The notes under the pieces: model-generated
What the model saw: only the letters and a program-made list of their open reading frames with translations
Databases searched by the model: none
What the model was told of the DNA's origin: nothing
In this document: positions 2,628-55,055 of the stretch, one piece after another
How the letters are laid out: the number at the start of each line of letters is the position of its first letter
Numbering within the stretch: the first letter of the stretch is position 1
Program-made: the position numbers and the translations under genes
Source of the DNA: Mizuhopecten yessoensis
Taxonomy: Eukaryota
Assembly: GCF_002113885.1 (NCBI RefSeq)
Contig: NW_018405386.1
Coordinates: 1,549,744-1,613,743, forward strand
DNA: 64,000 bases
Reading direction: 5' to 3'

Positions 2628-5600
2628 ATGCTGTTAACATCAAGTATACTCCTCGTTCTGTTGAACATCATATTCTGTTCAGCTGAAATATTAGAAAACA
2701 AACGCAGTAAGTATCTTGTGGTGTATCATTACTTATTTGATCAATTTTTCTATTTCATCACTTTAACATTTTATTCTCCTCTCCATGTTTAGCATTTTTG
2801 TCTCTAATATGTTTTGACTATTTCTTTTTTTTTTATGTTTGTTCCGATTCTGAAACAAATCCTCCTCGGACACGATATTCTGATTTCCTTTACATAAATG
2901 CAGATTTATTGATGCTGTGCTTTGTGTCTTCTTTTGTGAACAGAGGCAGATGAGCTGGATTTGATCGTGTCCATAGCTTTCCACGAGAAGATCGTACGAG
3001 AGGCTCCTGCCTTGAAGGAACTGGTAGAGAAACAAGCCGTAGAATGTGAAGCCAAACTGAACCTCACGTTTAAAGCATGTGAAAGCTGCAGAGCCAGGTA
3101 AGGTTCCATACCAATTAAAATGTGAATGTGGTTACTCTCATGTTTATGTTAAAATGATATTTGGATATCTTAAAATCGTTTATTATGATATCAACATCGA
3201 ATGCTCATCCGTCAAAGAGATATGTCGGGTTGCTATGCCTATTTCCCCAAAGCTGTGTCACGCTAGTGCGCGCATCCAACCGTGCACTGTTATGACGCCT
3301 CCTCAGGTATTTTTTTTTATGCATGTAGCAATATCGGAATTCCATGTCTAAGAATAGATTATTGTAAACAGACCACATATTTGGTATTTCGGCATTATTT
3401 GTTGGTGTTTAAGCACAATTAATAAATTTCATCAAAAATAGTGTCTTACCTACAAAGCGTAGCTGTACTGTACACGTGTACAGGGATTTGTTGACATGCT
3501 TCGATAGAAGTATCAAACCCAAGAGTCCAAGGTAATTTTGAAAAGTTGAAAATATACTCTAAAGGCTCTAAAAGCCCTTTAATTTACGTTAAGCATTTAA
3601 GCTTCGCAATGAGTACGGCACCTCCTTATAAAACGGCACAATATTTATAATAAGGTAATAATTGTTTGGGTTTTTTTTGTTTTTTGTTTTGTTCAAATTG
3701 TTTGTGTGAAAACTTTCTTTTAGGTATGAAATTATACCTCAACCAAACAAGGGCGGTCTTGACCAGCTGCTTTTACAGATATTACCGACAAGTTTGGGTG
3801 GATTAGCACTAGGTGGTGTAACTGGAAAACCGTTAGGAACACTTGTTGAGAAAACCATTCCAAGTGTAGTGAAAGATGTCGGCAGTAACCTTGAAACATT
3901 CTTCAAGGGCACGATTCCAAGGGTGGGAAAGGATATTAAGAAGCAGTTAGGGAAATTCTTCACCAAAACACTCCCTGGAACAGGGAAAACTGTTGTAAGT
4001 CATCTTGAAACCTTCTTTAAGAAGACAATACCGAAAACCGGAAAAAATGTAGGAGGCCATTTAGATACATTCTTCACAGAATCTATTCCGAAAGTGGGAA
4101 AGGATGTTGGTGGCCATCTGGAAACATTTTTCAAGAAAACACTCCCAAGCACAGGAAAAGATGTCGGAAACCATCTTCATACGTTCTTTAAGAAGTCGAT
4201 GCCAAAAGCCGGAAAGAAAGTTAAACATTTCTTCACGAATGCGATCCCTGAAGCCGGAAAGGAAGTTAAACATTTCTTTAAAAATACTATTCCAGGTAAA
4301 TAAATTTACATAGGAGTCAGAGGTATTATCAGTTTTATTGGTGAAGGTTAAAAGTTGGCTTTCATGATGAATTTACCGTTTTGTCTATGAAAATGATGAA
4401 GTGAAGCACCTGAAATATTTCATGAAACCTTTTTAGACTTTCCTTAAAAAAACTTTTAAGTTTTAGATACAAGTAAGATTTTATTTGAACTTAATAGCAC
4501 TCTCTGAAATTAAGCTCTTTTTATCAATTTACCTAACCATGATGGTACTATTGATTTTTGTGTGTGTGTCTTACTTTTCACAAGAAATTTTGATTTTCAT
4601 ATTCTCAAAAAAGTAGTACTAAAAAAAGTGGACCAGACAGAAGTCTCATATTGTTGCAAAAAATGTTACAATCAAATATTGAATGGCAAACCTTACTGAA
4701 TGAAGACGGTAGTTTCCATTCTATACATATTGTATATATATGTATCATTTATGAAAAATACATCGGAAGCAAATAAAGTATATGTAGTTTTTATATTCAG
4801 AGATTTTGCATTAATAATCATAAAAGTTTAAGTTTGTTATTGCAATTATAACATCAGAAAAGAATGTGTCCAACCTTCTGTTTAGCGGTTACAACTTGCT
4901 GTGCAAGCTTGTATTTTAAATTGTATAGTGTAATTTTTGATAGGTCTGTTTAATGGGAGACGCAGGCGACAAGCATCTCAGTGTCCCGACTGTGATAAGA
5001 TAAACACTGACACTATGACGTCAAGTGATGTGACGCGTACAGGTGAGTTGATATAAGTATTTATTCCTGAGATTACTGATAACGCCCTATTGAGTCGAGT
5101 GTTCAGAGAGACAACGCCAAAAAAAAGAAAGGAAGGAAGAAAAGAATAGACAGAGGACCAAAGTATTGCAATTGGGAGAGCAGATCAAATTTCGGTTTCT
5201 TCAATATCAAATAAGCAGAACATATAAACAAAATTGTAAAAAATCCGGATAAGCAGGGGTCCGAAGTTTGGTTTATGGGTTTATTTTGTTTAAGGTTCTA
5301 TTAACAGCTAAGGTCATTTAAGGACGTGGTTCCCACGTTAGTTGCCTCATACGTACAAGAGTGGTATACTACCCGTGTACGATTTACTACTGTAAATAAC
5401 TTTAAGAATGGGATATATTTTTTAATTGCAAAATTGTTTATTGAGTGCTATTCTTAGAAACACAAAATTTAGATCAGTACTGTTCTACATGCTGTTATGT
5501 GCGAAATTAGGTTAAATTTATAATGTCAGTTAAAAACAAGAAAAGAACTATTGTTTCTGCTAGAAGTGCTCTTCTAATCAGAAATTTATCAAAGTTTGCT

Positions 5601-7883
5601 GTGTCCAAGAAGATACTGATACACAGTTATTTGCTTAAATATGTATTCTATTATTATAGTTTACTTCTATTACTAGGTCTGTGTTGCTGCTGCTGGACTA
5701 TAGGTCCCCGAAGGCACCATACAACTAGTTGTCAATTTATCGACATAATTCGTCGCAATAACATTTTAATTCTGTCAAAATTTCTTAATCATTTTACCGT
5801 AAGGATTTAGCAACAGTTCATTACGTTTTACATTTAGGTGGGGTTTTTTTTCAATCTTTAAACGTGAACATTTTGACTTCCTGCATATGTGAGATTTAGA
5901 TAACAGAAACATGGATGCATTAAAATGATATTTTTGTCTGTGTGTTATTACTGTTATGCAGCGTTTTTAATGTCTTTTATATCATTTTTGCAATGTAAAT
6001 TACTTTGATTTTTTATAAATCTGAGTCATCAGTCAAAATAGCAAAAACATGGGAATATGCTTCATTTTATTGAAATAACAGGTAATTTGTTAGCTATATA
6101 CTTCATATCTTTCATGAATATTTTAAAGTTTCTTCTATTTCCCATGAAAGCTAGTAAATCCGTTTTATATTAGAAAAAGATATTAATAACTTGTGTTATG
6201 TTGTTTTTTTGGAAGTATGCGGACAAGCTTATGTGAACAACGTCGCACAATACAGGAAGATGGCGATCATAAACCAATTAATCCACGTCGACAAAAAACC
6301 CGTGATTACCAAGGTAAGTTATGGCCCAAATGTGAATATATTATTTGAGTTTAAAATGTAAATGCTGCATGTACAATTTGTCATAAGCTGTGTATACGCT
6401 GTACAGGGGCAACATCCCAACGATAGAGTATTTTAAATATATCATATATGTGAACCACGTAATTAGCGATAAAGTTAAGTATTTGACGACAAGTCCTATG
6501 CTGTTTTTTCTTCAAACATCTTTTGACAATAATGAACGGTTGTTAAAGATTCATTAGATAATGTATCGTTAATTTAAAAAAAAAAATCTTTCAATTGTGT
6601 TTACAAAAAATATTTGTGTTTTGGTTTTATCTCATAGTGATTATTTCTTTATATCTGCACGTGTAGTGTTTGTTTTATTTTGCTTTACTTAAGTTTGAGA
6701 ACTTTTCTAAATCTTTATTAACTTTAGGATGTTTAGGGTTTGAAATTTCTTTTATGCGGTCAGACTTCTTTTTATTATTTCTTTGTGAAAAAATTTCCCA
6801 ATGAGTCTTTAGTATTTTTCATTATGCATTTTTAAAATTTGTCTTTAAATTTCGAAGAAATTACTTGCCTTTTTACAAACGCAAAGTTGTATAGTGATTG
6901 CCTCAAGTCTTTCGGATTAACGTACGATTAACAGGTGAACTCGAATAATCTATTTCAATATTACAGTTACTAAGAATATTCTCTATCAATATTTATGTTA
7001 CTATGAATATTCTCTGTATCAATATTAAAGTTACTACGAATATTCTCTGTTTCAATATCACAGTTATGACGGATATTCGCAGAATCAACAATTCATTAAT
7101 TATTAGTATTTTACTTTATATTATTAATTAATTATATTATTAAAAGGAAAACTTAAAAAGTACAATACAATTACTACGAAGACGCTTTTGTTTGTTTATC
7201 ATTAAGTCATATTTATATTCAGTTATTATGATATTTTAAGAATACCGTAGAGACTATTTCATTTTTGACGAACATTTCCTATATCTACAATGTTCAACAT
7301 AACAGGATGACGAATATGCCATATACATGTATAAGTACATCATGCGTAACGATTATTTTTTCTTTATATCAATGAACATATGCTAATACCTAAAATTATA
7401 TTTCTATCCAAGTGTCTGCTACATATTACAATATGTCTATGTGTCTGGAATTTCTACCACACGTATGCATACTGTCCTATGTATTGCAGTTAACATAAGT
7501 GTCAGCTGTGTCAGTATATGATGCATAATGATTTCTATTCTTTATATCAATGAACATATGCTAATAGCTAAAATAGAATGTCTTTCAAAGTGTCTGCTAC
7601 ATATTGCAATATGTCAAAGTGTCTGGAATTTCTACCACACGTATGTATACTGTCCTATGTATTGCAGTTGACATAAGTGTCAGTTCTATTTCAGGTGACG
7701 TTCATGAGGAAAGATGCTGTCAATAAACTGCTAGAAGGTGTAGCTTCAGCATCACCCTTCGCTGTCACTTACACGGACGGAACAACCTCAGAAATTCTCA
7801 AATCTGACAGCACTCTCGATCTTCTGAATCCTAACCAGGCTTTGGGAGAAGAACTAGCTAAAGAAATATGGGACATGATATAA
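2628..7883 (+). CDS. Paralog A: secreted, furin-site-containing protein with cationic 19-aa amphipathic repeats (396 aa, 6 coding exons, unknown family)
   Basis: join(2628..2706,2944..3097,3724..4295,4944..5042,6216..6313,7695..7883), all AG/GT-flanked, 1191 nt in frame. Signal peptide MLLTSSILLVLLNIIFCSA; exon2 ECEAKLNLTFKACESC; exon3 TFFKKTIPKTGKNVGGHLD repeats; exon4 GLFNGRRRRQASQCPDCD; exon5 VCGQ..PVITK; exon6 VTF..LGEELAKEIWDMI*. AATAAA at 8113. Confidence 0.9.
7343..7683. repeat. About 178-bp tandem duplication in the last intron of paralog A
   Basis: TCTTTATATCAATGAACATATGCTAATA at 7361 and 7539; GTGTCTGGAATTTCTACCACACG at 7441 and 7619. Confidence 0.85.
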
Positions 7884-9438
7884 ACATCATTTACACTTGT
7901 TTAGACTATAAGTAATGCAGCAATTACATTTTACATTGTATTTCGCAATACAATTATATGTCATGTATGCATGCATTGTTACTGTTTGACCTCATTTCCA
8001 CTCGTAAGTGTGTTCATATTCCCCATACAGTAGAATTCTCTTTAATGATCAGAATATTAACTATGTAAATTTTCTAAATTAGCATATTTTGCATTTCTAA
8101 ATATTAGTTCTTAATAAAGTAATGACTAACTGTTGTGTTTGTTGAAGCCATATGCGTTGCAGTAACAGCGGTTTAAGACATTTTAATGAAGACATGTTCA
8201 TTAAAAATTAACAAAAGTTTAAAAATACATATAAAAGTCAAAACTAAATACCACAAACCGCTTTTTGAATTAAAGACGTAATTTTACGCAACAGGCTAGG
8301 ACAAAACTATTTATAAAACTTATTGAGTGGGAAGCACATATGTATATGTTCTGTATGTCGCACAATTATCTTTGATCGGAAGCACGCAAATATTGTTATT
8401 TCATATTCATACAGTTTTATTCTTTAAATAATTCAATTTCATGCTAATTTCTACGATAACCTTTTGCTAAATTGACATTAATTTTCTTGTGCTTGAATAT
8501 AATTTATCTGTTTAAACACATGGTTTTTTTTTGTAGAACGATGAAAATTAAAAATTAAATAAAAAAACAAAATTTCAATCTAATTTCAATAAAATTTAAC
8601 ATATGTTTTGTAATTGATGTATGTAATATTAATAAAGGTGTACTTAACTTCGGTTTTACGGTAGATAGAGCTTTTGAATATTCCTACAGGTGAATGAACT
8701 TGACAACAATATATAGGAATGCCGATGTGCTTTAAACGACACATTTGCAAGGATATAAATTCATGAAAAGAACACAACTTCATATATAAATTTGTTATAA
8801 TGGCAAAAAAACTCGAAACACAAACATTTTAGCCGGACAAAAGGTGGAAGTATGGCAATGGTTTAGGTTTAAACAACATTATTTAATATATTTGAATAGA
8901 TATGCGCGAGCGATTTGAAATCGTTATCGAATTAACTCGAATATATGCATCCGCCTAAACGAAATGATTTGTAGTTTGTTTTGTCATCAACATAAATCGA
9001 ATAATGTAATGACTCGCTACTATTACCGATAAAATTAATAAATATGCTGATGTTCCACTTGTGAACCAATATTCATCAACTAAGGAACAAGACATAAAAC
9101 GCAATACAATTACATTAAACATAGCAATCAGAGGTGTTGATGTCACGTTGACGTGTATTACATACTAAATGTCTTGTCTCCCAATAAGTGAAGAAGACGT
9201 TCTAACAGCCATTGCACCAACAGGTATATGATTCGACAGTGTGCATTTCATATGTGTACACTCTTACAATTTTAAACCAGGTAAACACCACAACTACATT
9301 AATCATGGCAATCAAAAGTGTTCCCAAAAACTAGATGTCACGTTTGCATATATATTGTATTCATTAATACGAATTATCTTGTCTCCAATTATATTGTCTT
9401 CCATCTCCCAATGTCGTGGCGTTACCGTATCAGGACGG

Positions 9439-12400
9439 ATGGTCATCATGTTCTTACTATTATGGGTTAGCGTCTTGCTATTGAACTGTTTTGGCTCAGC
9501 TGTGAACCACCAACAAAGTGAGTACACAAATATTGATGATCATACATTACGAGATTTCGAACAGCCTGTTGGTGAGTTATAGAGCTGTTTGAAATATAAG
9601 GTGTTCAATTATCGTGAGAAATGGTACCGATCTATGCATGTGAAAACATCTAAAAAGGTAAAGTGATATTTGTAATTAAGAAATGTCACATAAGAGATTT
9701 TGAAATGAATAAATTTACACAACAAATTAAACATTTAACGTTAAAAGCAATGACTGTTTATTGATGCTGGTATTGTAATTTTACTTAGCAAGAACAATGG
9801 TGTCATTTGCTGGATAACGACTGGATCTAAATGAAATGGTACTATATTTCATTACTGCTAATTGTGATTTGGCCTTATCCACTTTTTAACCAGTAACCCG
9901 CCCCTCCCTCCTCCCCCCCTCCTCCCCCGTGAAATTACCAGGTGAAAGCATATTGCTTAATTTCACTGAAATTTGGTTAAAAAAAAAGTTAAGTGATAGG
10001 GCCAAAAATGTACATATGTATATTGTTAGCTTATATGCATAATGACGCGTCAAACAAACTCGTTATATAGTATAAAAGACTTTAATTTTCAGCTTATACA
10101 GATATATTTATTCTTGTATTCAGCATGACGCAAAGCTGTCCAAATTTGCAGTAATAACAGACTATATATCATGTCTCACTTTGATAGTTAAACACGAAAG
10201 TTAGAGACCCCGTCAATCATCACCAGAATTTTACACTGGACTCCAACAAGGGGACAGACTTCCATAAGACTTCCGTTGGTGTAATTTATTGCAAAGTTAT
10301 CATCATAAACCTTTCTTTTCTGTGTTAATATAAGCGTGAAAAGTGAAAACCCTACCAGTTATTGAAATTATGAAATCTGTTTCTATGTCTAAAATGTAAT
10401 TTCAGGAGATAATCTTTTGCTTGATTTCTTTTAAATATTTACATTTAAAGCACAGTCATATTGGAAATTCAACACACACATAGACAAACAAAAACTACAA
10501 GAGAATACTGAAATGTCAACAAAATTGTAATTCTAATTCCAAATGGATAAAATTAGGACAAAAAATGAACAGGAAAAATAAAAATAAATGCATTGAGTCT
10601 TTTAAAAACGAACAAGGAGAATAAGACCAGGTGTTCCGGAACGATAAGCGTCCTCTAATTCATAACAACATGCAAATCTAGGTCAAATTTGAGTAAAGTC
10701 ATGTCCTCATAGCGAGAACTAGGGGTTGACACTAAGGAAACATAAACAAATTATTGTCACAAATCTTTATTTACATGTTAGTTATTTAGTGTCACTCTCC
10801 TAGTTCTCGCTTCATCAGTTTAGCTAAGTTTTTTTTGAACACCACCTTTTAAACTAAATATGCACATGAACCATGATTTCGCACTGCCCATCATCTGTCA
10901 GGTGATATTTTATGGAAAATGTAATGTAATGCTTTAATTGACGATCTCTAATTGTAAGCTATCGCTATCTGAGAAATTAGTTTGGGAATGTCTAGCACAT
11001 TTTCTCTTGACAAGTAACTATCTTTTTTGTCCTAACCCTGGTTATGTCAGGTGATTGGGACTAGTGCTCAGTGCCACCATTGTGTATGCAACTACACTGT
11101 CGTAAGAGGAAGCTGCGACAGGGGTTAACTTTGTTGCTTCCGGCATTATATACACACAGTTAAAGGTATTAAATACCATAAAGTGGTAATAAACCATGGA
11201 TACCAATACTCATTCACAAACCCTTGTCAATATAGATAATAAAAAAATATTTTCATTTCGGCTTAAAAATAAAAGATTATTTATTAGTTATTTTTGTAGT
11301 AATAAAAAATTGTTTAAATGGAACATCTGTTTTTTTTGCAACATTAATCATTTACAGATTAACAAAACTCATATTTAGATAAAAAAAAAGAAGCTTGTAT
11401 AGATCAACAGTCTTTATTTACAGATCAACAAGGTCTGCGACAAGGGGTAAACTTTGTTGCTTCCGGCATTGTATACACACAGTTAAAGGTATTAAATACC
11501 ATAAAGTGGTAATAAACCATGGATACCAATACTCATTTACAGACCCTTGTCAATATAGATAATAAAAAATATTTTCATTTCGGCTTAAAAATAAAAAAAA
11601 ATGTTTAAATGGAACATCTGTTTTTTTGCAACATTAATCATTTACAGATTAACAATACTCGTATTTAGATAAAAAAAAAAAATAAGCTTGTATAGATCAA
11701 CAGTCTTTATCTACAGATCAACAATGCTCATATATAGATTAAAATTAATCTTTTATATATCAACTGTCCTCATTAATAGATCAACAATGCTCATATAGAG
11801 ATCAGAAATAATCTTTTATAGATCAACATTTCCAATTTACAGATCAACAATACTCAAATTCAGATCAGAAATAATCTTTTATAGGTCAACAGTACTCATT
11901 AACAGATCAACAATGCTCATATTTAGATCAGAAATAATCTTTTATAGGTCAACAGTACTCATTAACAGATCAACAATGCTCATATTTAGATCAGAAATAA
12001 TATTTTATAGGTCAACAGTACTCATTACAGATAAATGCCAAGATTAACACCTAAATTATTCTGAATAAATACACTAATGATTTGACACACTCATGATATA
12101 AAAACCTACATAGAAAAGGCACATTCATAAAATAGCGAAATGTCTCATCACGAAAAGCGCTACAATTAATATACCGCTAAAACATACACGTTAACAGTAA
12201 CTATTTGCAGACAATTAATAACATATACAAACAAGAAAGATGTTTTGGTATCTGAAAATACAAATTTTGATATTTACAGAAGCGAAAGAGCTCAATGAGA
12301 TAGTGACACGAATTTACCGTGATAGGATCTTACGAGAATTCTACACTTATAAGGATCTTGTAAAACAACAAGAATTGGAATGTGAAACAAAAGTAAACGA

Positions 12401-15400
12401 GACAAAAGCTACCTGTCACACCTGTATATCGAGGTAAGACTAATGAAACAATTAAATGAAATAGTAATGTTTATTTCATGTTAAATTTTATCAAATAAAA
12501 ATGCATCAAATAACAATTAACTATCTAGAGACCTTCATTGTCAAACGTTAATGCATAACGTTCTTTTTTATGATATTTTTTTTATAACACAAAGATAGTC
12601 GTTACAACATTTTGCGACCTTTGAAATACGTCTGTTTCCTTTGTCAAGCAAAGAGTCACATGACCAATGTCTTGACTCTAACCTGCTGGAACTAACTCAT
12701 TAAGCCACAATGTGCCGAGTCAGTAACGTCAGCTGACATTTCGTCCGAATAACACCCTTGTACTGCAGACAGTCGGAGGGCCGAGTGATATGTTTATCCA
12801 TTCAGCCCCCTTATGTTATTTTGTATTATTTTACAGGTACAGTGATACATCACTACAGATTGACAATGTCACCAAGACACCAAAAACCAGCGATGTAAAC
12901 ATATCTACATTTGCTAATACCTTTCCAAACATCAATGGCGATAGTCTATCAGCAGTACGCGGTATAACCGAACCAACCATTGGTAGCGAAATACCACCCA
13001 GCAGTTCAACGAAAACGAGCAAAAACATAAACATACCGCTCAAAAGTAGTAGTAGCGATAGCTTACCAACCGTCAGTGATACTGTAATACCAACCACCAG
13101 TAGTAATAGTATACCATCTACCACTAGTGATAGTTTACCAACCACCAGTGATACTGTAATACCAACCACCAGTAGTAATAGCATACCATCTACCACTAGT
13201 GATAGTTTACCAACCGCCAGCGATACTGTAGTACCAACCACCAGTAGTAATAGCATACCATCTACCACTAGTGATAGTTTACCAACCGCCAGCGATATCG
13301 GAACACCAACTACCAGAAATGATATCTTACCAATCATCACTGAAACTGTAACGCTAACAACCACTGATAATGGCATACCAACCACCAGTAAAATAGCATC
13401 ACTAACCACAAGTATTCATAACCTACCAACAATCCCTGATATTGAAACATCAACAACAAGTAGTAATTCCATGACAACCATCAGTGATATTGTAAACCTA
13501 ACCACCAGTGATATAAATGAAAACACTAGAATTGGTAATAACATACCAACCACACATGATATAAAAACAATGCCGACCAAACAGGGTAGTTCGTTACGAA
13601 TTATAAGTAATACAACGACACCAGCCGACAGTAGCATTAAGATACCTCCCAAACACAATAGTACGTTACCAACTACAGGTAAATCAACCACCCCAGCCGA
13701 CAGTAGCATTAAGATACCTACCAAACACAGTGGTACGTTACCGACTACAGGTAAATCAACCACACCAGCCGACAGGAGCATTAAGATAACTACCAAACAC
13801 AGTGGTACGATACCAATTACAGGTAAATCAACCACACCAGCCGACAGTAGCATTAAGATACCTACCAAACACGGTAGTGCGTTACCAACTACAGGTAAAT
13901 CAACCACACCAGCCGACAGACGCATAAAGATGCCTACCAAACACAGTGGTACGTTACCAGCCATAGGTAAATCAACCACACCAGCCGACAGTAGCATAAA
14001 GATACCTACCAAACAGGGTAATATCACACCAACCAGCAGTCGTAACACATTAACAACAATCCGTGATAATAACATGATAACCATCACTGGTAATATCACA
14101 CCAACACTCACTAATGATAACAAACCAACCATCAGCGTAAATAACAGGCCGGCCATCGGAGGAAATGACATTCCAACTATAAGTGGTGATAATATACCAA
14201 CCACCATTGGCGATAACATACCATCAATTAGTGGTAATAGCCAACCGACCGTCAGGGGTGATAAACTAACCATCACCAGTGGTGATAATATACCAACCAT
14301 CAGTAGTGATAACATACCAACAATCAGTCGGGATAACATAACCGTTAGTGGTGATAACATACCAACCGTCAGTAGCGATAGAATATCAACGGTCAGTAGT
14401 GATATTATAACACCAATAATTGGTGATAACATACCAACCATTAGTGGTGATAACAAACAAACCTCCAGGGATGATAAAATACCAACAACCAATGGTGGAA
14501 ACATACTAACTACCATTGGTGATAACATACCAAGCAGCAGTGGAGATAGCATACCAACAACCAGAGGTGATACCATACTAACTACCATTGGTGATAACAT
14601 ACTAACTACCATTGGTGATAACATACCAAGCATCAGTGGAGATAGCATACCAACAACCAGAGGTGATACCATACCAACAACCAATGGTGAAAACATACTA
14701 ACTACCATTGGTGATAACAAACCAAGCATCAGTGGAGATGACATACCAACAACCAGAGGTGATACCATACTAACTACCATTGGTGATAACATACCAAGCA
14801 TCAGTGGAGATAGCATACCAACAACCAGAGGTGATACCATACTAACTACCATTGGTGATAACATACCAAGCAGAAGTGGAGATAGCATACCAACAACCAG
14901 AGGTGATACCATACCAACAACCAGTGGTGAAAACATACTAGCTACCATTGGTGATAACATACCAAGCATCAGTGGAGATAGCATACCAACAACCAGAGGT
15001 GATACCATATCAACAACCAATGGTGAAAACATACTAACTACCATTGGTGATAACAAACCAAGCATCAATGGAGATGACATACCAACAACCAGAGGTGATA
15101 CCATATTAACTACCATTGGTGATAACATACCAAGCATCAGTGGAGATAACATACCAACAACCAGAGGTGTTAACATACCAACAACCAATGGTGGAAACAT
15201 ACTAACTACCATTGGTGATAACAAACCAAGCATCAGTGGAGATGACATACCACCAACCAGTCGTGATAACATACCAACTACCTTTGGTGGTACCATACAA
15301 ACCATCGGAGGGGATAGCATACCAACCGTCAGTGGCATTGACATATCAACCATCAGTGGTAATGGCATACCAACTATCAGTGCAAATAACATACCAACCA

Positions 15401-22620: not shown

Positions 22621-22639
22621 CATGTGAGAAAGTTTACTA

Positions 22640-27668: not shown

Positions 27669-27725
27669 AGGGGTGTACATTGTGAAAAACTATTCTGACC
27701 TAAAAGAGGGCAACATACTTCAACC

Positions 27726-30700: not shown

Positions 30701-31004
30701 AAATAGTTGAGCTTTCATATGAAGCTGTTCAGAAGACGAACGTAACACACACACACAGGTATAAAATGCTATTCGAAAATTATGTCAGTATATGTCCATA
30801 TCAATGCATGCATGTGTCATAGAAATATTCATACACATGTGTATATATAATTATGTACATCTGACAGTTTGCACAGTGTATTTATTACTGTTTCTTAACT
30901 GCTCGAAATTATGCGTGCATAATGATACATCCGATTCAATGTATGTAAGTCTGTCTCAATGTATACATGTATGTATGTTCTGTCTGTCTGTCTGTGTGTC
31001 TGGT

Positions 31005-31039
<35 letters not shown>

Positions 31040-38869: not shown

Positions 38870-39290
38870 TAAACATACACCTTGACGGACCACATCGCCA
38901 CCTGAACACCTTTATTGATCCCTACACAAACACACACCTGAAATGACCACACACACCGCGAGCTGAATACTTTGAGTGATCCCGACCCAAATACACACCT
39001 TAACTGACCACATCGCCACCTGAACACCTTGAGTGATCCCCACCCAAACACACACCTGAAATGACCACTACGCTACTTGAACACCTTGAGTGGTCCCAAC
39101 CGAAACACACACCTTGAATTGCCACACCGCCACCTGAACACATTCAAAGATCCCGACCCAAATACTCACCATGGATGGCCACACCGCCACCTGAACACCT
39201 TGAGTGGTCCCGATCCAAACACGCACCTTGAATGGTCACACCGCTACCTGGACACTGAACAATGACCCAAGCATACACCTTAGATTGTCA
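38870..39290. repeat. About 60-bp degenerate tandem repeat
   Basis: CACACCTTRA..GACCACAYCGCCACCTGAACACCTTGAGTGRTCCC..CAAA units. Confidence 0.85.
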
Positions 39291-43400: not shown

Positions 43401-45954
43401 TTTGTGTCGTGTTTTGTGTATGGTTTGTGTTATGTTTTTTTGTAGATGCACTAGTTGTCGTGGTTTGTGCATGACACTAGTTTGTGTCGTGTTTTGTGTA
43501 CGTGTACTTGTTTGTATCGTGTTTTGAGTGTGTGTACTAATTTGTGTCGTGATTTTTGTAAATGGGTCGTGTTTTGTGTACGTGTGCAATTTAGTTTCAT
43601 GTTGTTTTTTGTATGTTTGCATCATGCTTTGTGTATTTAAGCAAGTTTTGTAGAGAACATTTTACGGTTATCATTTACTGGCGTGCTTTTACTGCTTACA
43701 TAGCGCACTGAGGTGACAATTATTTTATACATACATTCTTTAAAATATTGTGTTGTTAACTACGGGAATCCTAAAATATAGGTCGAAGCGTACCTGACTG
43801 GAATATTTCTGCCTCAGTCTTGGTGGTGATGTCAATTTGATCACACACCGGACATACGCTTGCCTGTCGCCTCATTCTGTTCAAAAGGGAGGTAGATCGT
43901 CTACGTCTACCAGAAAACAGACCTGAAATAAACCACAATACCAACAATAATAACAATACTAATTATAAACAACATTGCCAATTTTCGTGCAGTGAAATAT
44001 TCGTCCGTCATTTGTAAAATTCATATTCGCCCCGTATTAATTTCACCCCATTACATGCTATTTCTATAATGATATGTTCTATACTTATATTTGAGATTGT
44101 GGGTTAATGTCCACAGATTGGAAAGTGCTACCTTGTCCAGAGTTTGGAAAGGGCTATTTATAAATAAAAGATAGAATGATCGTTTCAGGATAATCAAAGA
44201 ATGTCTTATCTTTATTGTTCCATGTTTTATTTGAGTAGTTTTCACGTGGTATATACCTACCTCCGATACTATTCCCCAAGTCAGACAATCCACCAACAAT
44301 TTGAGTACCGACATCCGGAAGTGACGACATGACATTCCTTAGACCACTCAGAGCGGAGGTTGCGCCAGTTGAAATCAGATCAGGGAGGTTATTAAGTTTG
44401 GAAATAGTTGCCGTTCCAAATTTGGTAACACCGTTAACAAATCCACCGGAAGTACCTATTGCGTCCGTAATGGCTGCACCAAGATCGGTGAATTTTTGTC
44501 CAGCTGTGCTCAATGCCTTCTTAACTTCAGACACAGCTTTTTCGGCTTCATTGCCCAAGAAACTTCCGATACTTTTCAATGTAGATGTAGTGATTTTTGC
44601 AAATTGCTGACTTTTGCTACCCATGATGCCACCAAGATTCGCTATGTCTTGACTTGCTCCATTGAAAAAACTCTCCATGGCAACGACAGGTTTGTTGAGT
44701 TCGGAGACGATGCTGCTGAGCACATTGCCTGACGGTGCTGTAGCTCCAGGATTACTAGAAAACCCACAGTACCACACAAGTCAGTATAATATATCTCCGT
44801 CTATGATAGCGTTTTGGTTGCGTTAAAATATTAAAAACTTGACTATTATAACGACTTTTATAATGTTATTCAATTTGACAATAAACAATATATATATATA
44901 TATATATATGATATAAGATACATTGTTCTTCCCTTCATAAGCATTATATTCTGCTAACTATTTGTCTATGCTAGGGAAACAATAATCAATATTAATTGAT
45001 TTAATTTCAATACTTTGTCAAAAAGAAATGTAACAATCCAATGCGGAGAGTAATACTGTACACAGGTTTGTTATTTTCATAGATTCTTGAAAAACATCAA
45101 AGTTCTTTATCGTTTTCTGTCTCCTTTTCTCTCTCTACTTTCTGTCTTTCGTATCTACTTTTGCTTTTTCAGAAGTATCTCCCTAGGAGCCCGTCCTCAT
45201 TTGACCCCGGCTGTTGCAAGGACGTTAAACCACAAACAAACAAACAAACAAACAAACACACTTCGTCTCTTACCTTGCAACACATGTCTCGCAGTTGACA
45301 ATGGTTTGATTAATTTTTGTTTCACAATCCAGAATCAGGTCCTGTTGTCTGGCAAGAGTGACATTTACATTGTTTAGGATTTTCAGTATGAGTAACCCTC
45401 TTACTTCGTTATCAATATCTAAAAGAAAAAATACCAAATTACATTTTAATAGGTTAACACATATTTTCTAGTATATTTCAACAATAATACAACTAAAATA
45501 TATAACTACTACCCAAACAAATGACGTATTTATTTATCCTTTTTGTACTTTTTTCTCTCATCACATGTAAACCAAACGTAATTAATGGTGACGTCAATGT
45601 TCTGCCAATAACATAAACCGCGTTATTATCATTGATACTAGGTTAGTAAATAGAAGGTCCCCAACAAAAGGGGGGTTGGTTATCGTGTTTATCTCATTCG
45701 AGTTAGTAGATGTTCAAGTTGCATAAAGACAAGTGGTTTACCGAGCTGGCTTCATGGCATATACATGTGACCGATTTGCGTTCATATCAGCATGAAATCG
45801 AAAAACTATCATTTAATCTTTATATGATTACAACATATGATCACTAACCCTGTAGAGTTCTAGCGTTCACATCCACTGGTGTAGCTGCCAGCAATCCATG
45901 TATATAACCAAACACGACGAAACAGACACTCAGATACATCTTCATCAAGATCAT
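40481..45954 (-). CDS. Paralog D: most divergent family member, Gly/Ser/Ala-rich exon 3 and two furin sites (about 391 aa)
   Basis: complement join(45954..45849,45418..45274,44754..44261,43922..43794,41108..40999,40672..40481), 1176 nt in frame. Signal MILMKMYLSVCFVVFGYIHGLLA; CETKINQTIVNCETC; GLFSGRRRRSTSLLNRMRRQASVCPVCD; VCGATF..PIITK; ISYD..SQIAGQIYVKAX*. The last sense codon contains an n (40486), so the exact C-terminus is uncertain. Confidence 0.87.
41325..43585. repeat. 29-30-bp minisatellite filling the intron between coding exons 4 and 5 of paralog D
   Basis: TACTAGTTTGTGTCGTGTTTTGTGTATGA units; source of the many Cys/Val-rich spurious ORFs. Confidence 0.95.
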
Positions 45955-46813: not shown

Positions 46814-46885
46814 CTTCTGTTCGGCGTGACCTCAGCAATACTGTTCTTAAGTATAACTTCTTACCACTGGAAAAATCTTTATATA
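46814..46885 (-). promoter_or_regulatory. TATA box and short non-coding first exon of paralog D
   Basis: TATATAAA on - at 46885-46878; strong donor AAG|GTAAGT at 46814/46813; matching acceptor TTTCAG at 45964 just upstream of the ATG (45954). Confidence 0.6.
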
Positions 46886-49009: not shown

Positions 49010-52000
49010 TTAGTATTCAAATACGTACTCATCCCAGATTTTCTCAGCAAGAAAATGGCCAAATAGGGAGTTGGTGTTGCCATGTAGGTCAAGTGTTGTG
49101 CTGGTGTCGGTATAAACCCTTGACTGATCACCAGCTCCGATACTGTAGGTCACATTGAACGGTGTGACAGTAAACACTTTCTTCAAAGGTATACTTATTG
49201 TATCTTCTGTCCTAAACGACACCTGTATTAAAAATATTATTTAATAATAATATTGTATTCGATTATATTTTGGAGGAAAATTGCACCGATAACAATATTT
49301 TAGGGTTTATCTTGTTGGTTTTATTTAAATGAATAGTTTTATTATTGAAACTTTATTGATAGATTTTAAAAGTACTTTAAGACATTATTATTATTTTTTT
49401 TTTTAAACATCATCTTGGGTAATTAGCGAATAATATATCGTTCGGTATTAGAAAAAAAAACATCACTAATTAAATTAAATTTGGAATTATTTTCTGAAAA
49501 GGAAGCGAATTTTGCTGGGTGGTCCATATGTTTGCGGTTCAATATGTGATAACTACCAAGACACATTACACTGAAACAAGCACATACATAGCAACCAATG
49601 GTAACATATCATACTAGTTATCGAGGTGAACGAAATCGGATGTATGTTTTCACGTAGCCTGTTATATCGGCCACCGTATCTGAAATCCTTCCTCAATTTA
49701 AAAGCATGGTTATGTGATAATTATTGTGCTTTCGTATTTATCGAAAACTACACGAAATTTAGTGATTAACATTTTACATAAAAAGCTGCAATGGGTAATT
49801 CATAACTTCTTAAAAATATATCACATTTCGTAAATTTATTCCAAATATGGCTACATCAAAGTGTCTATTCCATCATATTATACAACATTTATCAGATATG
49901 TAAAAACTTCTTGGTAGCTCTTCTTTTATCTTTTGAATTGTATTTTAATTATGCCAGTGCTTGTTTGGTTCGTTTCTGCCTATGTCCATTTAACAGCTAT
50001 GGTCATTTAGAGAAGTGCCAGGTTCTGGTGGTAAAGGAAAGCCTGAGTACCCGGAGAAAAACCACCGATTAGCGGCCAGTACCTATCCATGCACTTACCT
50101 GGGTAACGATTATATTTCCATCCTTCAGCCACTGGAATATGTTTACCATATTGGTATATTTATTTTTAAAGATGTTGTACACGGTATCGCCGCAGACTGA
50201 TTGTGAAGAGAAAACAAGAACATTTCATGTTACTGCTGTTTCGGTGTTACTGAGAACATATTTTATTCACATTTCTTTTCGTTTAGCTTTTTTCAAAACT
50301 AGATGCATATCAAAGCAAGGAAACATGTATTCTTAACCAAAACTGTGACCTCGAAAAGGGTAATTTCGATAGCATCATACTAACACAATCATTTAGTTTT
50401 CATGCATTCAATAATGAATTTTGGGATACTTACCATCCCTCCAAATTTCTTTCGCGGTTTTCGTTGCTGTGTCGATTAAGTCGCAGGAAGGACACCCTGA
50501 TGTTGCTCTTCTCCTTCTGAGTCCGAATAAACCTGCAGATACGTGAACATTTGTTGAAAAATAACAGAACAATATTAACCATATTTACATATTAGTGAGA
50601 ACGCTTATATTCTATAGTATATTGTTCTATTCTATCAAATTAATAAATTATTCATGAAATGACACAATACCACACTGTGTTCTGAAAGTTCAATTATATG
50701 TTCATCAATCGGAAGCGTAAAATATTTTGCATCCTGACCAATATTTTTATATTTTATATTACAATTATTCACAGAACTTGACAAAAAACAATTATTCATA
50801 AAAAACAAGGAACATTCTAAGAACATTAACTTTTTAACTAAAAAGATAAATTAAAATAATCAAAAGAAATAATCCGGAATTGCATTATTACCTTTAATGG
50901 CGTTACCAAATCTTTTGAAGTCTTTACCAATTGTTTTCCCTAAATTCGGTATTGTACTGGTGAAGAATTTGTCCAAACGCTTTCCTACAGTTTCAGTTGT
51001 AGCTGGTAGTCTACCAGTGAAAAAAGTATCAATCTCTTTGCCAATGTTCTTGACAGTTTTTGGAATAGTGCCTGTGACAAATATATCGATCTCTTTTCCA
51101 ATTTTGTCGACTGTTTCTGGAATTGTTTCCGTAAAAAAAGTTGGATCCTTTTCCAAAGTATCTTTAACTCCATTTCCGAAATTGTCCAAATCACTAGCGG
51201 CTGGGATAACACCTAAAATCACTTTATCATATCCAAAACTGTCTGGTGAATGGCCAGAATTGGGGTTCCTGTAAAAAGAGAAATAAAATATGTCGATAGT
51301 AACGTATACCATGGTGTATAAGGATGGAATTAAAACTCGAAGGCAACGAAGGGTAAAACCAGGAGGAACTATATAACCGTATGCAGAATGCGACTACAGA
51401 TACTTTAACAAAGCGAACACATTAATATATGTCCATAAGATACTGTTTACGCATAAAGTGGGTTGGAAACGTCCACCATTCATTATGTAAGTGAAAGACT
51501 TAAATAGTACGTTTCATATGTACATACCTTCCTATACAGGCCAGACAGGTATGAATAGTTTTGTTGATTTGCGTTTTGCATGCTAGCGCGGCTTCGTCAA
51601 ACTTTGTCTGTAGAGCAGGAAGTTCGGTTTGGTATCTGTTTTGATAATTTACTATTATATAAGTATTCAATTCTCTAGCCTCTGTAAAAAGAAATGTAAA
51701 ACATATTTAATTAAGTAAGCACATGTGTCCATTTCATTATAAGTATGAAACGAGTTCAGATTTATATTAATGGACCCGTATGAAATTAAACTAAAAATAA
51801 CAATAAAAAAACACAAAGTGACGATTCTCTGAACCTGGCGTCAACGCATATAGCCAAATCAATGCTCAAAGTAGATATGAAAAGACAACAGTAAGAATCG
51901 AGGTGGCAGCAATCACAAATCCTTCCAAAATCAGGAGCTTAAGGTAGGGGCCTTGAACGGGTAGATGTTTGTACCACCTGTTGTCATCATTTCTATAGCA

Positions 52001-55000
52001 AATCCATGGAGGAATACATGTAACACTGATCGAGGACACAGCTTACAAGTCTTAAGTCATGGTTAACTTTGACCATAAACTGTCGACTTTTAGCGATGTA
52101 TTGGTCAACATGACATATCTATCCAGAAAGTCATAAGGCCTATGAAAGGTAATAGAGTAGGGAATCAACTAACAAGACTGATATGTTACCACTGAGGAAA
52201 ACAAAATTAAGAATCTTGAACTTTCCAGGGATATTTTTTCTTGTTACAGATAGTAGGATTACTTGTCAATCAGTCATGTAAGTTATCTACGAAGGAACAC
52301 ACTATACACCGAGAAAATTGTAGCCCAGTAAAAGTTCGCCTTTCGCCGATAAAAAACCATATTCGCTTAGGGTTAATTTCGCCCTTCACAATTACTTGCT
52401 ATTTAGTATATGCTGTTCGCTAGCATTTGCTGTAATGATATATACGCCCTCATTACGGAGGGCGAAAAAGACGAAAGTTAAAATGCAGGGAACATTTCCC
52501 GGTGTTCAGTATGTTTACTACTCGTATATTAGCGTAAACATTAATCATGCACCTGTAAAGGTGATTCATTCCAAAGTACTCTATTGAAAAACAACTTCAT
52601 TCCACAGAAAGATGATAACGTCATTCCAAGAAATAATGTCTCTAAAAGATAAACTACAATATTGACCGACTCTCCATGACCGGGCATACTACCTTTGAGA
52701 TAACTGAAAATTGAAAATGAAAGATATTTACTGACGTAATGCCTTATTCGATATCTGGCCTATTGATATTGACGAAATGTAAATTGTTTCCATGGCCTTC
52801 CCCCAATTATATGTCATTAGCACATGGAAATCATCTGTCTTTAGACTGACGCTGACGAATGAACACATACAGTTTCATATCGTGCTTCGATGTCTGCTGG
52901 TTCCTGTTGTTGTCTTGACAAACCAACTTTGAGTTATAATTTAGTCCTTTATCTAACCAACTTTGAGTTATAATTAAGTCTTTGTGTCTTACCAACTTTG
53001 AGTTCTTATAAAGTCCTTATGTCTAACCAACTTTTAGTTCTAATTTAGTCTTTGTATCTAACCAACTTTGAGTTCTAATTTAGTCCTTGTGTCTAACAAA
53101 CTTTGAGTTCTAATTTAGTCTTTCTATCTAACCAACTATGAGTTCATATTTAGTCCTCGTGTCTAACCAACTTTGAGTTCTAATTTAGTCCTTGTGTCCA
53201 ACCAACTTTGAGTTCTAATTTAGTCCTTGTGTCTAACCACTTTTGAGTTATAATATAGTCTTTGTATCTAACCAACTTTGAGTTCTAATTTAGTCCTTGT
53301 GTCTAACAAACTTTGAGCTCTAATTTAGTCTTTCTATCTAACCAACTATGAGTTCTAATTTAGTCCTTGTGTCTAACCAACTTAGAGTTATAATATAGTC
53401 GGTGTCTAACCAACATTGAGTTCTAATATAGTCCTTGTGTCTAACCAACTTTGAGTTCTAATTTAGTCTGTGTCTAAACAACATTGAGTTCTAATATAGT
53501 CCTTGTGTCTAACCAGCTTTGAGTTCTAATTTAGTCTATGTCTAACCAACATTGAGTTCTAATATAGTCCTTGTGTCTAACCAACTTTGAGTTCTAATTT
53601 AGTCTGTGTCTAAACAACATTGAGTTCTAATTTAGTCCTTGTGTCTAACCAGCTTTGAGTTCTAATTTAGTCCCCGTGTCTAACCAACTTTGAGTTCTAA
53701 TTTAGTCTGTGTCTAACTAACTCTGAGTTCTAATTTAGTCTGTGTCTAACCAACTCTGAGTTCTAATTTAGTCCCCGTGTCTAACCAACATTGAGTTCTA
53801 ATATAGTCCTTGTGTCTAACCAAAATTGATTTCTAATATAGTCCTTGTGTCTAACCAACTTTGAGGTCTAATTTAGTCTGTGTCTAATCAACTTTGAGTT
53901 CTAATATAGTCTGTGTCTAACCAACTCTGAGTTCTAATTTAGTCCCCGTGTCTAACCAAAATTGATTTCTAATATAGTCCTTGAGTCTAACCAACTTTGA
54001 GTTCTAATTTAGTCCCCGTGTCTAACCAACATTGAGTTCTAATATAGTCTGTGTCTAACCAACTATGAGTTCTAATATAGTCCTTGTGTCTAACCAAAAT
54101 TGATTTCTAATTTAGTCTTTGTGTCTAACCAAAATTGATTTCTTATATAGTCCTTGTGTCTAACCAAAATTGATTTCTAATATAGTCCTTGAGTCTAACC
54201 AACTTTGAGTTCTAATTTAGTCTTTGTGTCTAACCAAAATTGATTTCTAATTTAGTCCTTGTGTCTAACCAACTTTGAGTTATAATATAGTCTTTTTGTC
54301 CAACCAACTTTGAGTTCTAATTTAGTCTGTGTCTAACCCACCTTGAGTTATAATTTAATCTGTGTCTAACCAACTTCGAGTTATAATCTAGTCCTTTTGC
54401 CGAACCGACGTATACGAGTAAGCAATAATATTGCAATACCAATACAAGTATTTTGCAATAATTGCCTATTAGGAAATTATTTTAAAATTGGAATAGCATG
54501 CAATATACATTACCACCTGTTTGTTTTTAAGCATATTTATTACAGATTTTACAGATATGTGAATATTTGATCAAAAATATCCAAATTAAGCTTGCTTGTT
54601 GAGTGATAATTTCCAAAACTGCAAGAAAAAAAATCTATCCATCATGGAAACATGCTGAGATGCTCAAAGGCCAATTTCTACATAAAAGTGTTACATATTA
54701 CTCATGTTCTAGGAATACAAATTATTGTAGCATATTGCAATCTTCCCTGAATATCTGTCAATTTTCAGATGTTATGATTAATATAGGAAAACTACATCAT
54801 TGTACCCCTTAAATTAATTTAAACGATGCGTCTCCAGCAATATTTCTATTGAAATATATACATAAGAATATATATCATATAATACAAATTCGAGGTTTTT
54901 ACATACCGCTTTATCACAACCTAGTTCGAAGGTCGCCTCAAAGCGGTTCAAACAATATATCCTTGTTATAACTTACTATCAGCACCGTGATGGATTTCTG

Positions 55001-55055
55001 CAGATGTCAGTAAAAACCTGATCAGAAACAAGCAGGAATACTTGTCCATGTTCAT
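49010..55055 (-). CDS. Paralog E: inverted sister of paralog C (339 aa)
   Basis: complement join(55055..54977,51681..51528,51268..50892,50532..50434,50196..50099,49222..49010), 1020 nt in frame. MNMDKYSCLFLIRFLLTSA; CKTQINKTIHTCLAC; TFFTETIP-type repeats; GLFGLRRRRATSGCPSCD; VCGD..IIVTQ; VSFRTEDT..FGHFLAEKIWDEYVFEY*. Confidence 0.88.
52920..54400. repeat. 33-35-bp minisatellite in intron 1 of paralog E
   Basis: CTAACCAACTTTGAGTTCTAATTTAGTCCTTGTGT units. Confidence 0.95.

What the first reader, a model, noticed from the sequence alone, without database searches (positions are those of the whole stretch)
2628..55055. Hidden five-gene cluster of an unrecognised secreted pro-protein family with a hypervariable exon-3 cassette
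Seen: five genes (+,+,+,-,-) with identical intron phases (1,2,1,1,0) and near-constant exon sizes (exon1 79/79/79/106/79; exon2 154/154/154/145/154; exon4 99/93/99/129/99; exon5 98/89/95/110/98; exon6 189-219 nt). Only exon 3 varies widely (572, 4406, 380, 494, 377 nt). Conserved scaffold: signal peptide, C-x10-C-x2-C, poly-Arg site, C-x2-C, VCG, [IV][IV]T[KEQ]/[VI][ST][FY], an xVT[YF] strand, L[DN][LI], and [LI]A-x-x-I[WY]. Inference: a constant disulfide-clamped carrier presents a rapidly diversifying payload (cationic amphipathic helices, Gly/Ser-rich helices, or a mucin-like rod) that is released at one end by a proprotein convertase. This suggests a secreted effector system such as immune, lipid-binding, adhesive or shell matrix. 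I cannot assign it to a named family.
Basis: partly seen in the sequence, partly recalled or inferred. Interest (0 to 1): 0.92.

Follow-up and report, generated by a model that had tools for sequence, protein, structure and literature searches.

The report
Scallop clusterin-like secreted protein gene cluster
Five neighbouring scallop genes, at least one of them transcribed, encode secreted proteins that are probably cut into two disulfide-linked chains; their predicted fold most resembles the vertebrate chaperone clusterin, and each carries a different long flexible tail, so this may be an unrecognised invertebrate version of that protein type.

Summary
The window is Yesso scallop (Mizuhopecten yessoensis) and carries five intact six-exon genes. 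Spliced transcript contigs from four studies confirm all five junctions of gene 1.

Three details need correcting:
- **Not hidden:** gene 1 is RefSeq LOC110448639, annotated as "uncharacterized".
- **Not only five:** a sixth, divergent copy lies on another scaffold.
- **Not hypervariable:** exon 3 differs between paralog classes, but within each class it is conserved between scallop genera (81-84% for gene 4).

Sequence searches (Pfam, PDB sequences, 1.8 billion protein representatives) find only uncharacterized proteins of four scallop genera. AlphaFold models of two orthologs give human clusterin as the best full-length structural match. The order of parts also matches clusterin.

My reading is a reduced, three-disulfide clusterin-like scaffold. 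Exon 3 is an enlarged amphipathic tail that stays tethered and is freed at one end by cleavage at an invariant RRRR. Homology to clusterin is plausible but unproven; the Pfam clusterin model does not match.

The scan's earlier notes on this feature all come from this same window; none is from other DNA.

The parts
2628..7883 (+). Gene 1 (396 aa; RefSeq LOC110448639). Exons 2628-2706, 2944-3097, 3724-4295, 4944-5042, 6216-6313, 7695-7883. Transcript ends lie near 2598-2627 and at 8051 to at least 8300.
   Evidence: Model built. All five junctions seen in spliced contigs of four runs. Identical to P0020.
3724..4295 (+). Gene 1 exon 3: about ten proline-punctuated amphipathic repeats of 15-19 residues. 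Lys/His/Phe-rich, net charge +17.
   Evidence: hydrophobic moment z = 8.3 against shuffles. The equivalent segment in the ortholog model has pLDDT below 50.
4958..4969 (+). Gene 1 RRRR, a furin-type site 4 residues before the C-x2-C.
   Evidence: Invariant in 11 orthologs and paralogs.
9439..21388 (+). Gene 2 (1676 aa). Exons 9439-9517, 12280-12433, 12837-17242, 18723-18815, 19989-20077, 21179-21388.
   Evidence: Open frame and GT-AG introns. No RNA check was possible and no ortholog was found.
12837..17242 (+). Gene 2 exon 3 (4406 nt): Thr/Ser/Pro-rich mucin-like tandem arrays with 24/72/168-nt periods, then gene-1-type amphipathic repeats at its 3' end.
   Evidence: 72-nt array at 16053-16503 is 99% identical over 6.3 copies.
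18734..18748 (+). Gene 2 RRRRR site.
27726..33832 (+). Gene 3 (341 aa). Exons 27726-27804, 29562-29715, 29961-30340, 32018-32116, 32516-32610, 33614-33832. RRRRR at 32029-32043.
   Evidence: Orthologs in Ylistrum balloti have the same six-exon layout.
40481..45954 (-). Gene 4 (391 aa). Exons 45954-45849, 45418-45274, 44754-44261, 43922-43794, 41108-40999, 40672-40481. Exon 3 is a Gly/Ser/Ala-rich neutral helical segment. RRRR at 43908-43897, with a second basic site (RMRR) ending at 43867. N at 40486 left as X.
   Evidence: The exon 3/4 junction matches the RefSeq partial protein P0018 at 100%.
49010..55055 (-). Gene 5 (339 aa). Exons 55055-54977, 51681-51528, 51268-50892, 50532-50434, 50196-50099, 49222-49010. 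RRRR at 50518-50507.

Best explanation
The five genes, plus a sixth elsewhere in the genome, encode a scallop-family (Pectinidae) group of secreted glycoproteins built on a reduced clusterin-like plan. After the signal peptide comes a long helix ending in C-x10-C-x2-C, with an invariant N-glycosylation sequon. Then comes the exon-3 segment, an invariant RRRR, a second cysteine triad (C-x2-C ... VCG), a second long helix, and a small C-terminal alpha/beta domain.

Inferred mechanism: the two cysteine triads form three interchain disulfides, and the two long helices pack antiparallel. A furin-type convertase in the Golgi cuts after RRRR. The secreted product is then a disulfide-linked two-chain protein. 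The exon-3 segment stays attached by its N-terminal end and becomes a long, free, flexible tail, in the position of clusterin's beta-chain tail.

The tails differ by paralog class:
- Genes 1, 3 and 5: Phe-rich, proline-punctuated amphipathic repeats.
- Gene 4: a neutral Gly/Ser-rich helical segment.
- Gene 2: a mucin-like rod followed by amphipathic repeats.

By analogy with clusterin (apolipoprotein J), the tails would bind hydrophobic surfaces such as lipids, misfolded proteins or microbial membranes.

Shown: the gene models, expression and splicing of gene 1, conservation across four scallop genera, the invariant site and cysteines, and the predicted fold with its best structural match. Inferred: the disulfide pairing, the cleavage, and the function.
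For: - **Genes and expression:** models and open frames; RNA junctions for gene 1; identity to RefSeq.
- **Conservation:** orthologs in Pecten maximus, Argopecten irradians and Ylistrum balloti keep the exon layout. The invariant columns are C, N-x-T, C, C, F-G-RRRR, C, C, V-C-G.
- **First model:** the scaffold has pLDDT 70-90 and the exon-3 segment is below 50. All-against-all structural search puts human clusterin 7ZET_A first: Z 6.8, rmsd 4.2 A, 115 residues, model 22-321 against chain 25-446. It is the only one of 48,161 chains with Z of 5 or more; the next is 4.4. Both clusterin crystal forms lead the second look at Z 6.8 and 6.3, with the next at 3.6.
- **Prior lead:** I wrote the clusterin lead down from the motifs before any fold search.
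- **Second model (gene 4 ortholog):** clusterin is the only match that spans the whole chain (Z 7.1, 191 residues).
[quoted passage not shown] Its homologs share only about 15% identity.
- **Tail properties:** the tails are strongly amphipathic (z 4.9-8.3 against shuffles) and 8-10% Phe in genes 1, 3 and 5.
- **Chain association:** the N-terminal helix and the C-terminal chain are predicted to associate with weak support: ipSAE 0.46 against a best control of 0.01. That mark was reached by 51 of 78 solved complexes and 2 of 108 mismatched pairs, but a pass at 0.60 or under is rated weak. The three runs share at least 93% of their contacts and the partner pLDDT is at least 77.
Against: - **No sequence link to clusterin:** the Pfam PF01093 model is absent from every exon and from the full-length proteins even at E up to 10. 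It finds nothing above its cut-off in the whole genome. Profile searches against PDB sequences find nothing.
- **Weak Foldseek result:** clusterin appears only at E about 1.
- **Modest Z:** the tool itself warns that Z below 8 can reflect a common arrangement. For the second model, clusterin does not stand out from helical-bundle hits.
- **Structural differences:** there are three cysteines per side, not five. There is no equivalent of clusterin's third bundle helix, alpha-chain tail or helix alpha-7. The tails are Lys-rich, whereas clusterin tails are Lys-poor.
- **Model limits:** both models come from the same shallow alignment of 11 sequences.
- **Not measured:** cleavage, disulfide pairing and function.
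Confidence: 0.55

Rival explanations
1. This is a scallop-specific orphan family unrelated to clusterin. It acts as a precursor of host-defence peptides: the cationic amphipathic exon-3 repeats, possibly amidated at the C-terminus, are the active membrane-disrupting product, and the cysteine scaffold is only a carrier or pro-region.
For: - No sequence relative exists outside the scallop family among 1.84 billion representatives.
- The gene 1 and gene 3 tails carry net charges of +17 and +11 with high hydrophobic moments.
- Tandem duplication with species-specific gene 3/gene 5 pairs is typical of immune genes.
Against: - There is only one conserved basic site. The exon 2/3 boundary has no conserved cleavage motif across orthologs, and the repeats are not separated by Arg-containing sites. 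The segment therefore stays tethered to a disulfide-bonded scaffold.
- The gene 4, gene 5 and gene 2 tails are neutral or acidic (0, +1, -23).
- The scaffold is as conserved as the tail, and more so in the gene 1 class, which is not expected of a mere pro-region.
- Clusterin is the top structural hit.
Confidence: 0.25
2. These are structural secreted material: components of mucus, byssus or shell matrix. The scaffold would mediate disulfide cross-linking or assembly, and exon 3 would supply the bulk properties (mucin rod, glycine-rich segments).
For: - Gene 2 carries about 1,100 residues of Thr/Ser/Pro-rich tandem repeats with 28 N-x-S/T sequons.
- Gene 4 is Gly/Ser/Ala-rich.
- Lineage-restricted, repeat-rich secreted proteins are common in molluscan matrices (own knowledge).
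Against: - The six mature-chain cysteines are all accounted for by an intramolecular 3+3 arrangement in the model, which leaves none for cross-links.
- Most members are small, soluble-looking and helical.
- Gene 1 transcripts appear in runs from 10 different studies, so expression is not rare or narrowly confined. The tissues of those runs are unknown.
Confidence: 0.12
3. The models are prediction artefacts or decaying pseudogenes.
For: Gene 2 has no ortholog and no annotation that I could find.
Against: - All five have open frames across six exons with identical phases.
- Gene 1 has spliced transcripts.
- Orthologs with the same structure exist in three other genera.
- A 4.4-kb repeat exon in gene 2 stays open.
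Confidence: 0.02

Closest known systems
Clusterin / apolipoprotein J (human CLU; PDB 7ZET, 7ZEU; Pfam PF01093)
   Same: - Secreted with a signal peptide.
- A long N-terminal helix followed by a cysteine cluster that carries an N-glycan.
- A central disordered, Phe-rich, amphipathic region.
- A single furin-type site between the two cysteine clusters.
- A second cysteine cluster, a long helix antiparallel to the first, and a small C-terminal beta-sheet-plus-helix domain.
- It is the best, and only full-length, structural match of the models.
- From memory, not tested: the C-x10-C-x2-C spacing equals that of clusterin's first three beta-chain cysteines.
   Different: - No detectable sequence similarity; the Pfam model fails.
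- Three disulfides rather than five.
- No third bundle helix, no alpha-chain tail and no helix alpha-7. The cut lies 4-5 residues before the second cysteine cluster in four of the five genes; in gene 4 the RRRR is 14 residues before it and the second site (RMRR) 4.
- The tail is enlarged to between 126 and 1,468 residues of tandem repeats, and is Lys-rich in some paralogs.
- It is a tandem multigene family with paralog-specific tails, whereas (own knowledge) vertebrates have clusterin and clusterin-like 1.
Exchangeable apolipoproteins (apoA-I/A-IV/E type amphipathic repeats)
   Same: Tandem amphipathic helices punctuated by proline at regular intervals, which is the classic lipid-surface-binding design.
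   Different: The period is 19 (or 15) residues, not 11/22. There is no Pfam match. The repeats are embedded in a disulfide-linked scaffold with a convertase site.
Secreted mucins
   Same: Exon 3 of gene 2 is a single large exon of Thr/Ser/Pro-rich, near-identical tandem repeats.
   Different: It has no mucin-type terminal domains. The repeat block is inserted into the family's tail position and is followed by gene-1-type amphipathic repeats.

Membership tests
Clusterin (Pfam PF01093) | Match to the family HMM above its gathering score | tested here: not met
   No PF01093 hit at E up to 10 for ten exon pieces, for five full-length orthologs or for gene 1's own protein P0020. The HMM against the whole genome gives nothing over its cut-off and nothing in this window.
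Clusterin (Pfam PF01093) | Sequence similarity to solved clusterin chains | tested here: not met
   Profile and single-sequence searches of PDB sequences at E up to 10 never list clusterin.
Clusterin (Pfam PF01093) | Three-domain fold: coiled coil, disulfide domain, C-terminal alpha/beta roll | tested here: inconclusive
   7ZET_A is the top hit of 48,161 chains for model 1 (Z 6.8, rmsd 4.2 A, 115 residues, end to end; next 4.4). It is the only full-length hit for model 2 (Z 7.1, rmsd 7.2 A, 191 residues). Foldseek E is about 1. Z is below the tool's caution line of 8.
Clusterin (Pfam PF01093) | Secretory signal peptide | tested here: met
   All five proteins start with a hydrophobic stretch of about 20 residues encoded by exon 1. 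Judged by inspection; no signal-peptide predictor was available.
Clusterin (Pfam PF01093) | Single internal furin-type site that splits the precursor between two cysteine clusters | tested here: met
   RRRR is invariant in all 11 database members and all five window genes, and lies between the triads. Actual cleavage was not tested.
Clusterin (Pfam PF01093) | Five interchain disulfides (5 + 5 cysteines) | tested here: not met
   The mature chains have 3 + 3 cysteines in every member.
Clusterin (Pfam PF01093) | Disordered, Phe-rich hydrophobic tails on both sides of the cleavage site | tested here: inconclusive
   The upstream side is present and enlarged (pLDDT below 50; Phe 8-10% in genes 1, 3 and 5). 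The downstream tail is absent in four of the five genes, where the first cysteine follows the site after 4-5 residues (14 after RRRR in gene 4). The composition is Lys-rich, unlike clusterin.
Clusterin (Pfam PF01093) | N-glycans in the disulfide domain | tested here: met
   An invariant N-x-T lies inside the C-x10-C loop. This shows the sequon only; glycosylation was not tested.
Exchangeable apolipoproteins (Pfam PF01442 type) | 11/22-residue amphipathic repeats and a family HMM match | tested here: not met
   The repeats are 19 or 15 residues long. No apolipoprotein family appears in the Pfam output.
Multi-copy antimicrobial peptide precursors | Processing sites flanking each repeated peptide unit | tested here: not met
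   There is one conserved basic site per protein (two in the gene 4 class). Repeats are separated by Pro, not by Arg-containing sites. There is no conserved site at the exon 2/3 boundary.

The most novel reading that the evidence does not exclude
The family is not descended from clusterin at all. On this reading it is an independently evolved scallop-specific secreted scaffold: a three-disulfide helical hairpin plus a small alpha/beta domain. It would have converged on clusterin's design of a convertase-freed, tethered, hydrophobic tail, and then diversified the tail by exon-3 repeat turnover into cationic, neutral and mucin-like versions. That would make it a new protein family with a modular 'one carrier, many tails' logic.
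Probability: 0.3. Interest if true: 0.75.

Novelty: new variant of a known kind. Interest (0 to 1): 0.6.

Why it matters
As far as I know, clusterin is described as a vertebrate protein. This rests on my own knowledge; the papers I searched gave no invertebrate member. Its mechanism was tied only recently to two disordered tails freed by furin cleavage (PMC12527946).

A molluscan family with the same order of parts would do two things if the link is real. It would push this type of extracellular chaperone or apolipoprotein far beyond vertebrates. It would also offer a natural tail-swap series for testing what the tails do, because the family has a minimal three-disulfide core and paralogs that differ mainly in the tail: cationic repeats, a neutral helical segment, and a mucin rod.

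If the link is not real, this is a conserved, expressed, wholly uncharacterized secreted family of commercially important bivalves, possibly tied to immunity or lipid transport. Either way, about 15 database proteins currently named 'uncharacterized' gain a testable description.

Tried and rejected
- **Pfam:** exon by exon and on full-length orthologs, only noise below the cut-offs (YlbE, CdiA_C_tRNase, DLP_helical and similar, all against the repeat segment).
- **PDB sequence searches:** five queries, nothing.
- **ESM Atlas:** two feature searches gave no usable hit. The 'atlas' fold library was not available.
- **Foldseek against PDB:** no match at E 0.001 or better.
- **Gene 2 orthologs:** a search with the end of its exon 3 among proteins of 807-2,569 residues found none. 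There are no gene-2-like exons within 10 kb downstream of the Pecten gene 1 ortholog.
- **Relatives outside scallops:** the last search, with the C-terminal chain of P0001, returned only gene 1 orthologs.
- **Weak hits set aside:** P0006-P0010 of the representative search (multi-stretch matches to a short beta-strand motif) and P0019 (a Firmicutes protein matching 17% of the query) look like repeat or composition matches and were not followed.
- **Literature:** searches for every LOC identifier and for clusterin with scallop or invertebrates found nothing relevant.
- **Intergenic ORFs:** no Pfam match.
- **Complex prediction:** the test of the two mature chains gave only weak support (0.46 against a best control of 0.01) and is not used as a main argument.
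- **Not done:** I could not get clusterin sequences through a tool, so no profile-profile comparison was run.
- **Joined models:** I handed no joined spliced model to any database or fold tool. Joined translations were built only inside scripts from window.fa, to check frames, align paralogs, build the tree and compare locally with proteins and loci already fetched. Database work used exons by reference or database proteins.

Full report
**What is there**

The window is AT-rich animal DNA.

| Gene | Strand | Span | Protein |
|---|---|---|---|
| 1 | + | 2628-7883 | 396 aa |
| 2 | + | 9439-21388 | 1676 aa |
| 3 | + | 27726-33832 | 341 aa |
| 4 | - | 45954-40481 | 391 aa |
| 5 | - | 55055-49010 | 339 aa |

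- Each gene has six exons of exactly the stated sizes. All introns are GT-AG, the phases are 1,2,1,1,0 and the frames are open. The single N at 40486 was left as X.
- Paralogous exons recognise each other at E 1e-4 to 1e-25.
- Every motif in the finding is present.
- Exon-3 lengths are all 2 mod 3, so the cassette can change size without disturbing the frame.

**Expression and identity**

- Contigs of four runs from four different studies are spliced at 2706|2944, 3097|3724, 4295|4944, 5042|6216 and 6313|7695, with no mismatches. They start near 2598-2627 and end between 8051 and beyond 8300. Their spliced form shows that these runs are transcriptomes.
- The joined gene 1 protein is letter for letter RefSeq XP_021350676.1 / UniProt A0A210QSZ0, 'uncharacterized protein LOC110448639' of Mizuhopecten yessoensis.
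- A RefSeq partial protein (LOC110444037) is 100% identical to exons 3-4 of gene 4. It comes from a 1,558-bp duplicate scaffold.
- So the species is the Yesso scallop, and the cluster is only partly 'hidden'.
Their support is the open frames and the orthologous RefSeq models with the same six-exon layout.

**Family size and spread**

- A profile of exon 6 finds only the five window copies in the 988-Mb genome.
- A search with gene 4's exon 3 uncovered a sixth, more divergent member on contig C1668. It has the same exon order, C-x10-C-x2-C with a sequon, a Gly/Ser/His-rich cassette, a dibasic KR instead of RRRR, C-x2-C, VCG and the C-terminal strands.
- Among 1.84 billion protein representatives, the exon-6 profile finds five true clusters. 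All are 'uncharacterized' proteins of Pecten maximus, Argopecten irradians and Ylistrum balloti. Further searches add more members from the same genera only.
- In Ylistrum, three members lie in tandem on one strand.
- A tree gives three orthogroups: gene 1 with gene 2 as a long-branched sister; gene 4; and genes 3/5, which form species-specific pairs.

**How variable exon 3 really is**

- Between paralog classes, exon 3 differs in length (126 to 1,468 residues) and in composition.
- Within classes it is conserved between genera. The gene 4 class is 81-84% identical with no gaps, equal to its scaffold. The gene 1 class is 58-67% identical, against 76-94% for exons 2, 5 and 6, with the repeat number kept. 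Only the gene 3/5 class shows repeat-number changes.
- Among paralogs, exon 3 is no more diverged than exons 2, 5 and 6.
- The one clearly recent expansion is in gene 2, where a 72-nt unit is repeated 6.3 times at 99% identity.
- 'Rapidly diversifying payload' is therefore an overstatement. The classes are old and mostly under constraint.

**What the cassettes are**

- Genes 1, 3 and 5, and the end of gene 2's cassette, consist of proline-punctuated units of 19 (or 15) residues. These units are strongly amphipathic: the mean hydrophobic moment is 4.9-8.3 standard deviations above shuffles.
- In genes 1, 3 and 5 the cassettes are 8-10% Phe. Net charge ranges from +17 (gene 1) to +1 (gene 5) and -23 (gene 2).
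- Gene 4's cassette is neutral, Gly/Ser/Ala-rich and also amphipathic.
- No conserved cleavage motif exists at the exon 2/3 boundary or between repeats. The only invariant basic site is the RRRR at the start of exon 4. The gene 4 class has a second site, RMRR, ten residues later.

**Naming the scaffold**

- Sequence methods give nothing: Pfam, PDB sequences, the PF01093 model over the whole genome and the Atlas.
- From the motif pattern I had noted clusterin as a lead before any fold work.
- An AlphaFold model of the Pecten ortholog P0003, from an 11-sequence alignment, has a confident scaffold (pLDDT 70-90) and a disordered cassette (below 50). Its elements are a short strand, a helix at 25-81 carrying the first cysteine triad, the cassette, RRRR, short helices with the second triad, a helix at 223-243, four to five strands and a C-terminal helix.
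- Foldseek finds nothing significant, with clusterin at E about 1.
- The aligner that compares the model with all 48,161 representative chains puts human clusterin first: Z 6.8, rmsd 4.2 A, 115 residues, model 22-321 against chain 25-446. It is the only chain with Z of 5 or more; the next is 4.4. Both clusterin crystal forms lead the second look (6.8 and 6.3, next 3.6).
- A model of the most divergent class (P0002, the gene 4 ortholog) again gives clusterin as the only match covering the whole chain (Z 7.1, 191 residues, rmsd 7.2 A). There it does not stand out from helical-bundle matches to the low-confidence cassette.

**Comparison with published clusterin**

The clusterin structure paper (PMC12527946) describes these features:
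- a signal peptide and a long coiled coil;
- a small disulfide domain with five antiparallel interchain bonds and three N-glycans;
- disordered Phe-rich tails generated by furin cleavage, which carry the chaperone, receptor-binding and lipoprotein-forming activities;
- a C-terminal three-stranded sheet wrapped round a helix;
- homologs that share only about 15% identity.

The scallop proteins have these parts in the same order, but reduced: three disulfides, two bundle helices and no alpha-chain tail. The beta-side tail is enlarged into repeats.

**Mechanism I consider most likely**

1. The protein folds in the ER into a helical hairpin clamped by three disulfides.
2. It is N-glycosylated at the invariant sequon.
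3. A furin-type convertase cuts after RRRR.
4. A two-chain protein is secreted, and its exon-3 segment is now a tethered, free-ended amphipathic tail that binds hydrophobic targets.

The prediction that the N-terminal helix and the C-terminal chain associate received only weak support (0.46 against a best control of 0.01). Cleavage, disulfide pairing and function are inferences.

**Membership and novelty**

I do not file the family as a member of Pfam Clusterin. The HMM test and the five-disulfide feature were tested and not met, and the fold test is suggestive but below the caution line. I rate it as a new variant of a known kind, namely a clusterin-like two-chain secreted protein with modular tails. 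I give a 30% chance that it is an independent invention.

**Method note**

Those searches used exons by reference or database proteins. Joined translations existed only inside scripts.

Noticed in passing
G000:C1668 about 840,900-847,800 (+); loci L011, L012, L013: A sixth, divergent family member lies on another scaffold. It has the same exon order, a Gly/Ser/His-rich cassette 26% identical to gene 4's, and a dibasic KR in place of RRRR. The exon-6 profile missed it, so the family may be larger than sequence profiles show.
   Followed up: partly
G000:C78530 (1,558 bp; locus L010) versus window 44261-44754: A tiny scaffold is a 100% identical duplicate of gene 4 exons 3-4, probably assembly redundancy. 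It is the source of the partial RefSeq protein LOC110444037.
   Followed up: yes
window 58234-62837 (-): Exons of a short-chain dehydrogenase/reductase gene on the minus strand (adh_short_C2, E 3.9e-10 and 1.4e-5).
   Followed up: partly
window 43867-43908 (-): The gene 4 class has two basic sites (RRRR, then RMRR ten residues later), conserved in the Pecten ortholog. Double cleavage would excise a 10-residue spacer peptide.
   Followed up: no
window 4955-4969, 18731-18748, 32026-32043, 43897-43911 (-): A Gly directly precedes the Arg run in four of the five genes and in most orthologs. After carboxypeptidase trimming this would be a C-terminal amidation signal on the tail. In gene 5, Leu intervenes.
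   Followed up: partly
window 16053-16503: A 72-nt unit (24 residues, Asn/Thr/Asp-rich) is repeated 6.3 times at 99% identity inside gene 2 exon 3. This is a very recent in-frame expansion and a likely site of length polymorphism or assembly collapse.
   Followed up: partly
window 3325-3513 and 5283-5330: Transcriptome contigs at high depth cover short intronic stretches of gene 1, with loose ends running into unrelated sequence. These are probably copies of dispersed repeats transcribed elsewhere.
   Followed up: no
window 853-1512 and 41800-43700: Long strand-skewed simple-repeat tracts (the window's highest GC skew, up to 0.45): one upstream of gene 1 and one inside intron 4 of gene 4.
   Followed up: no
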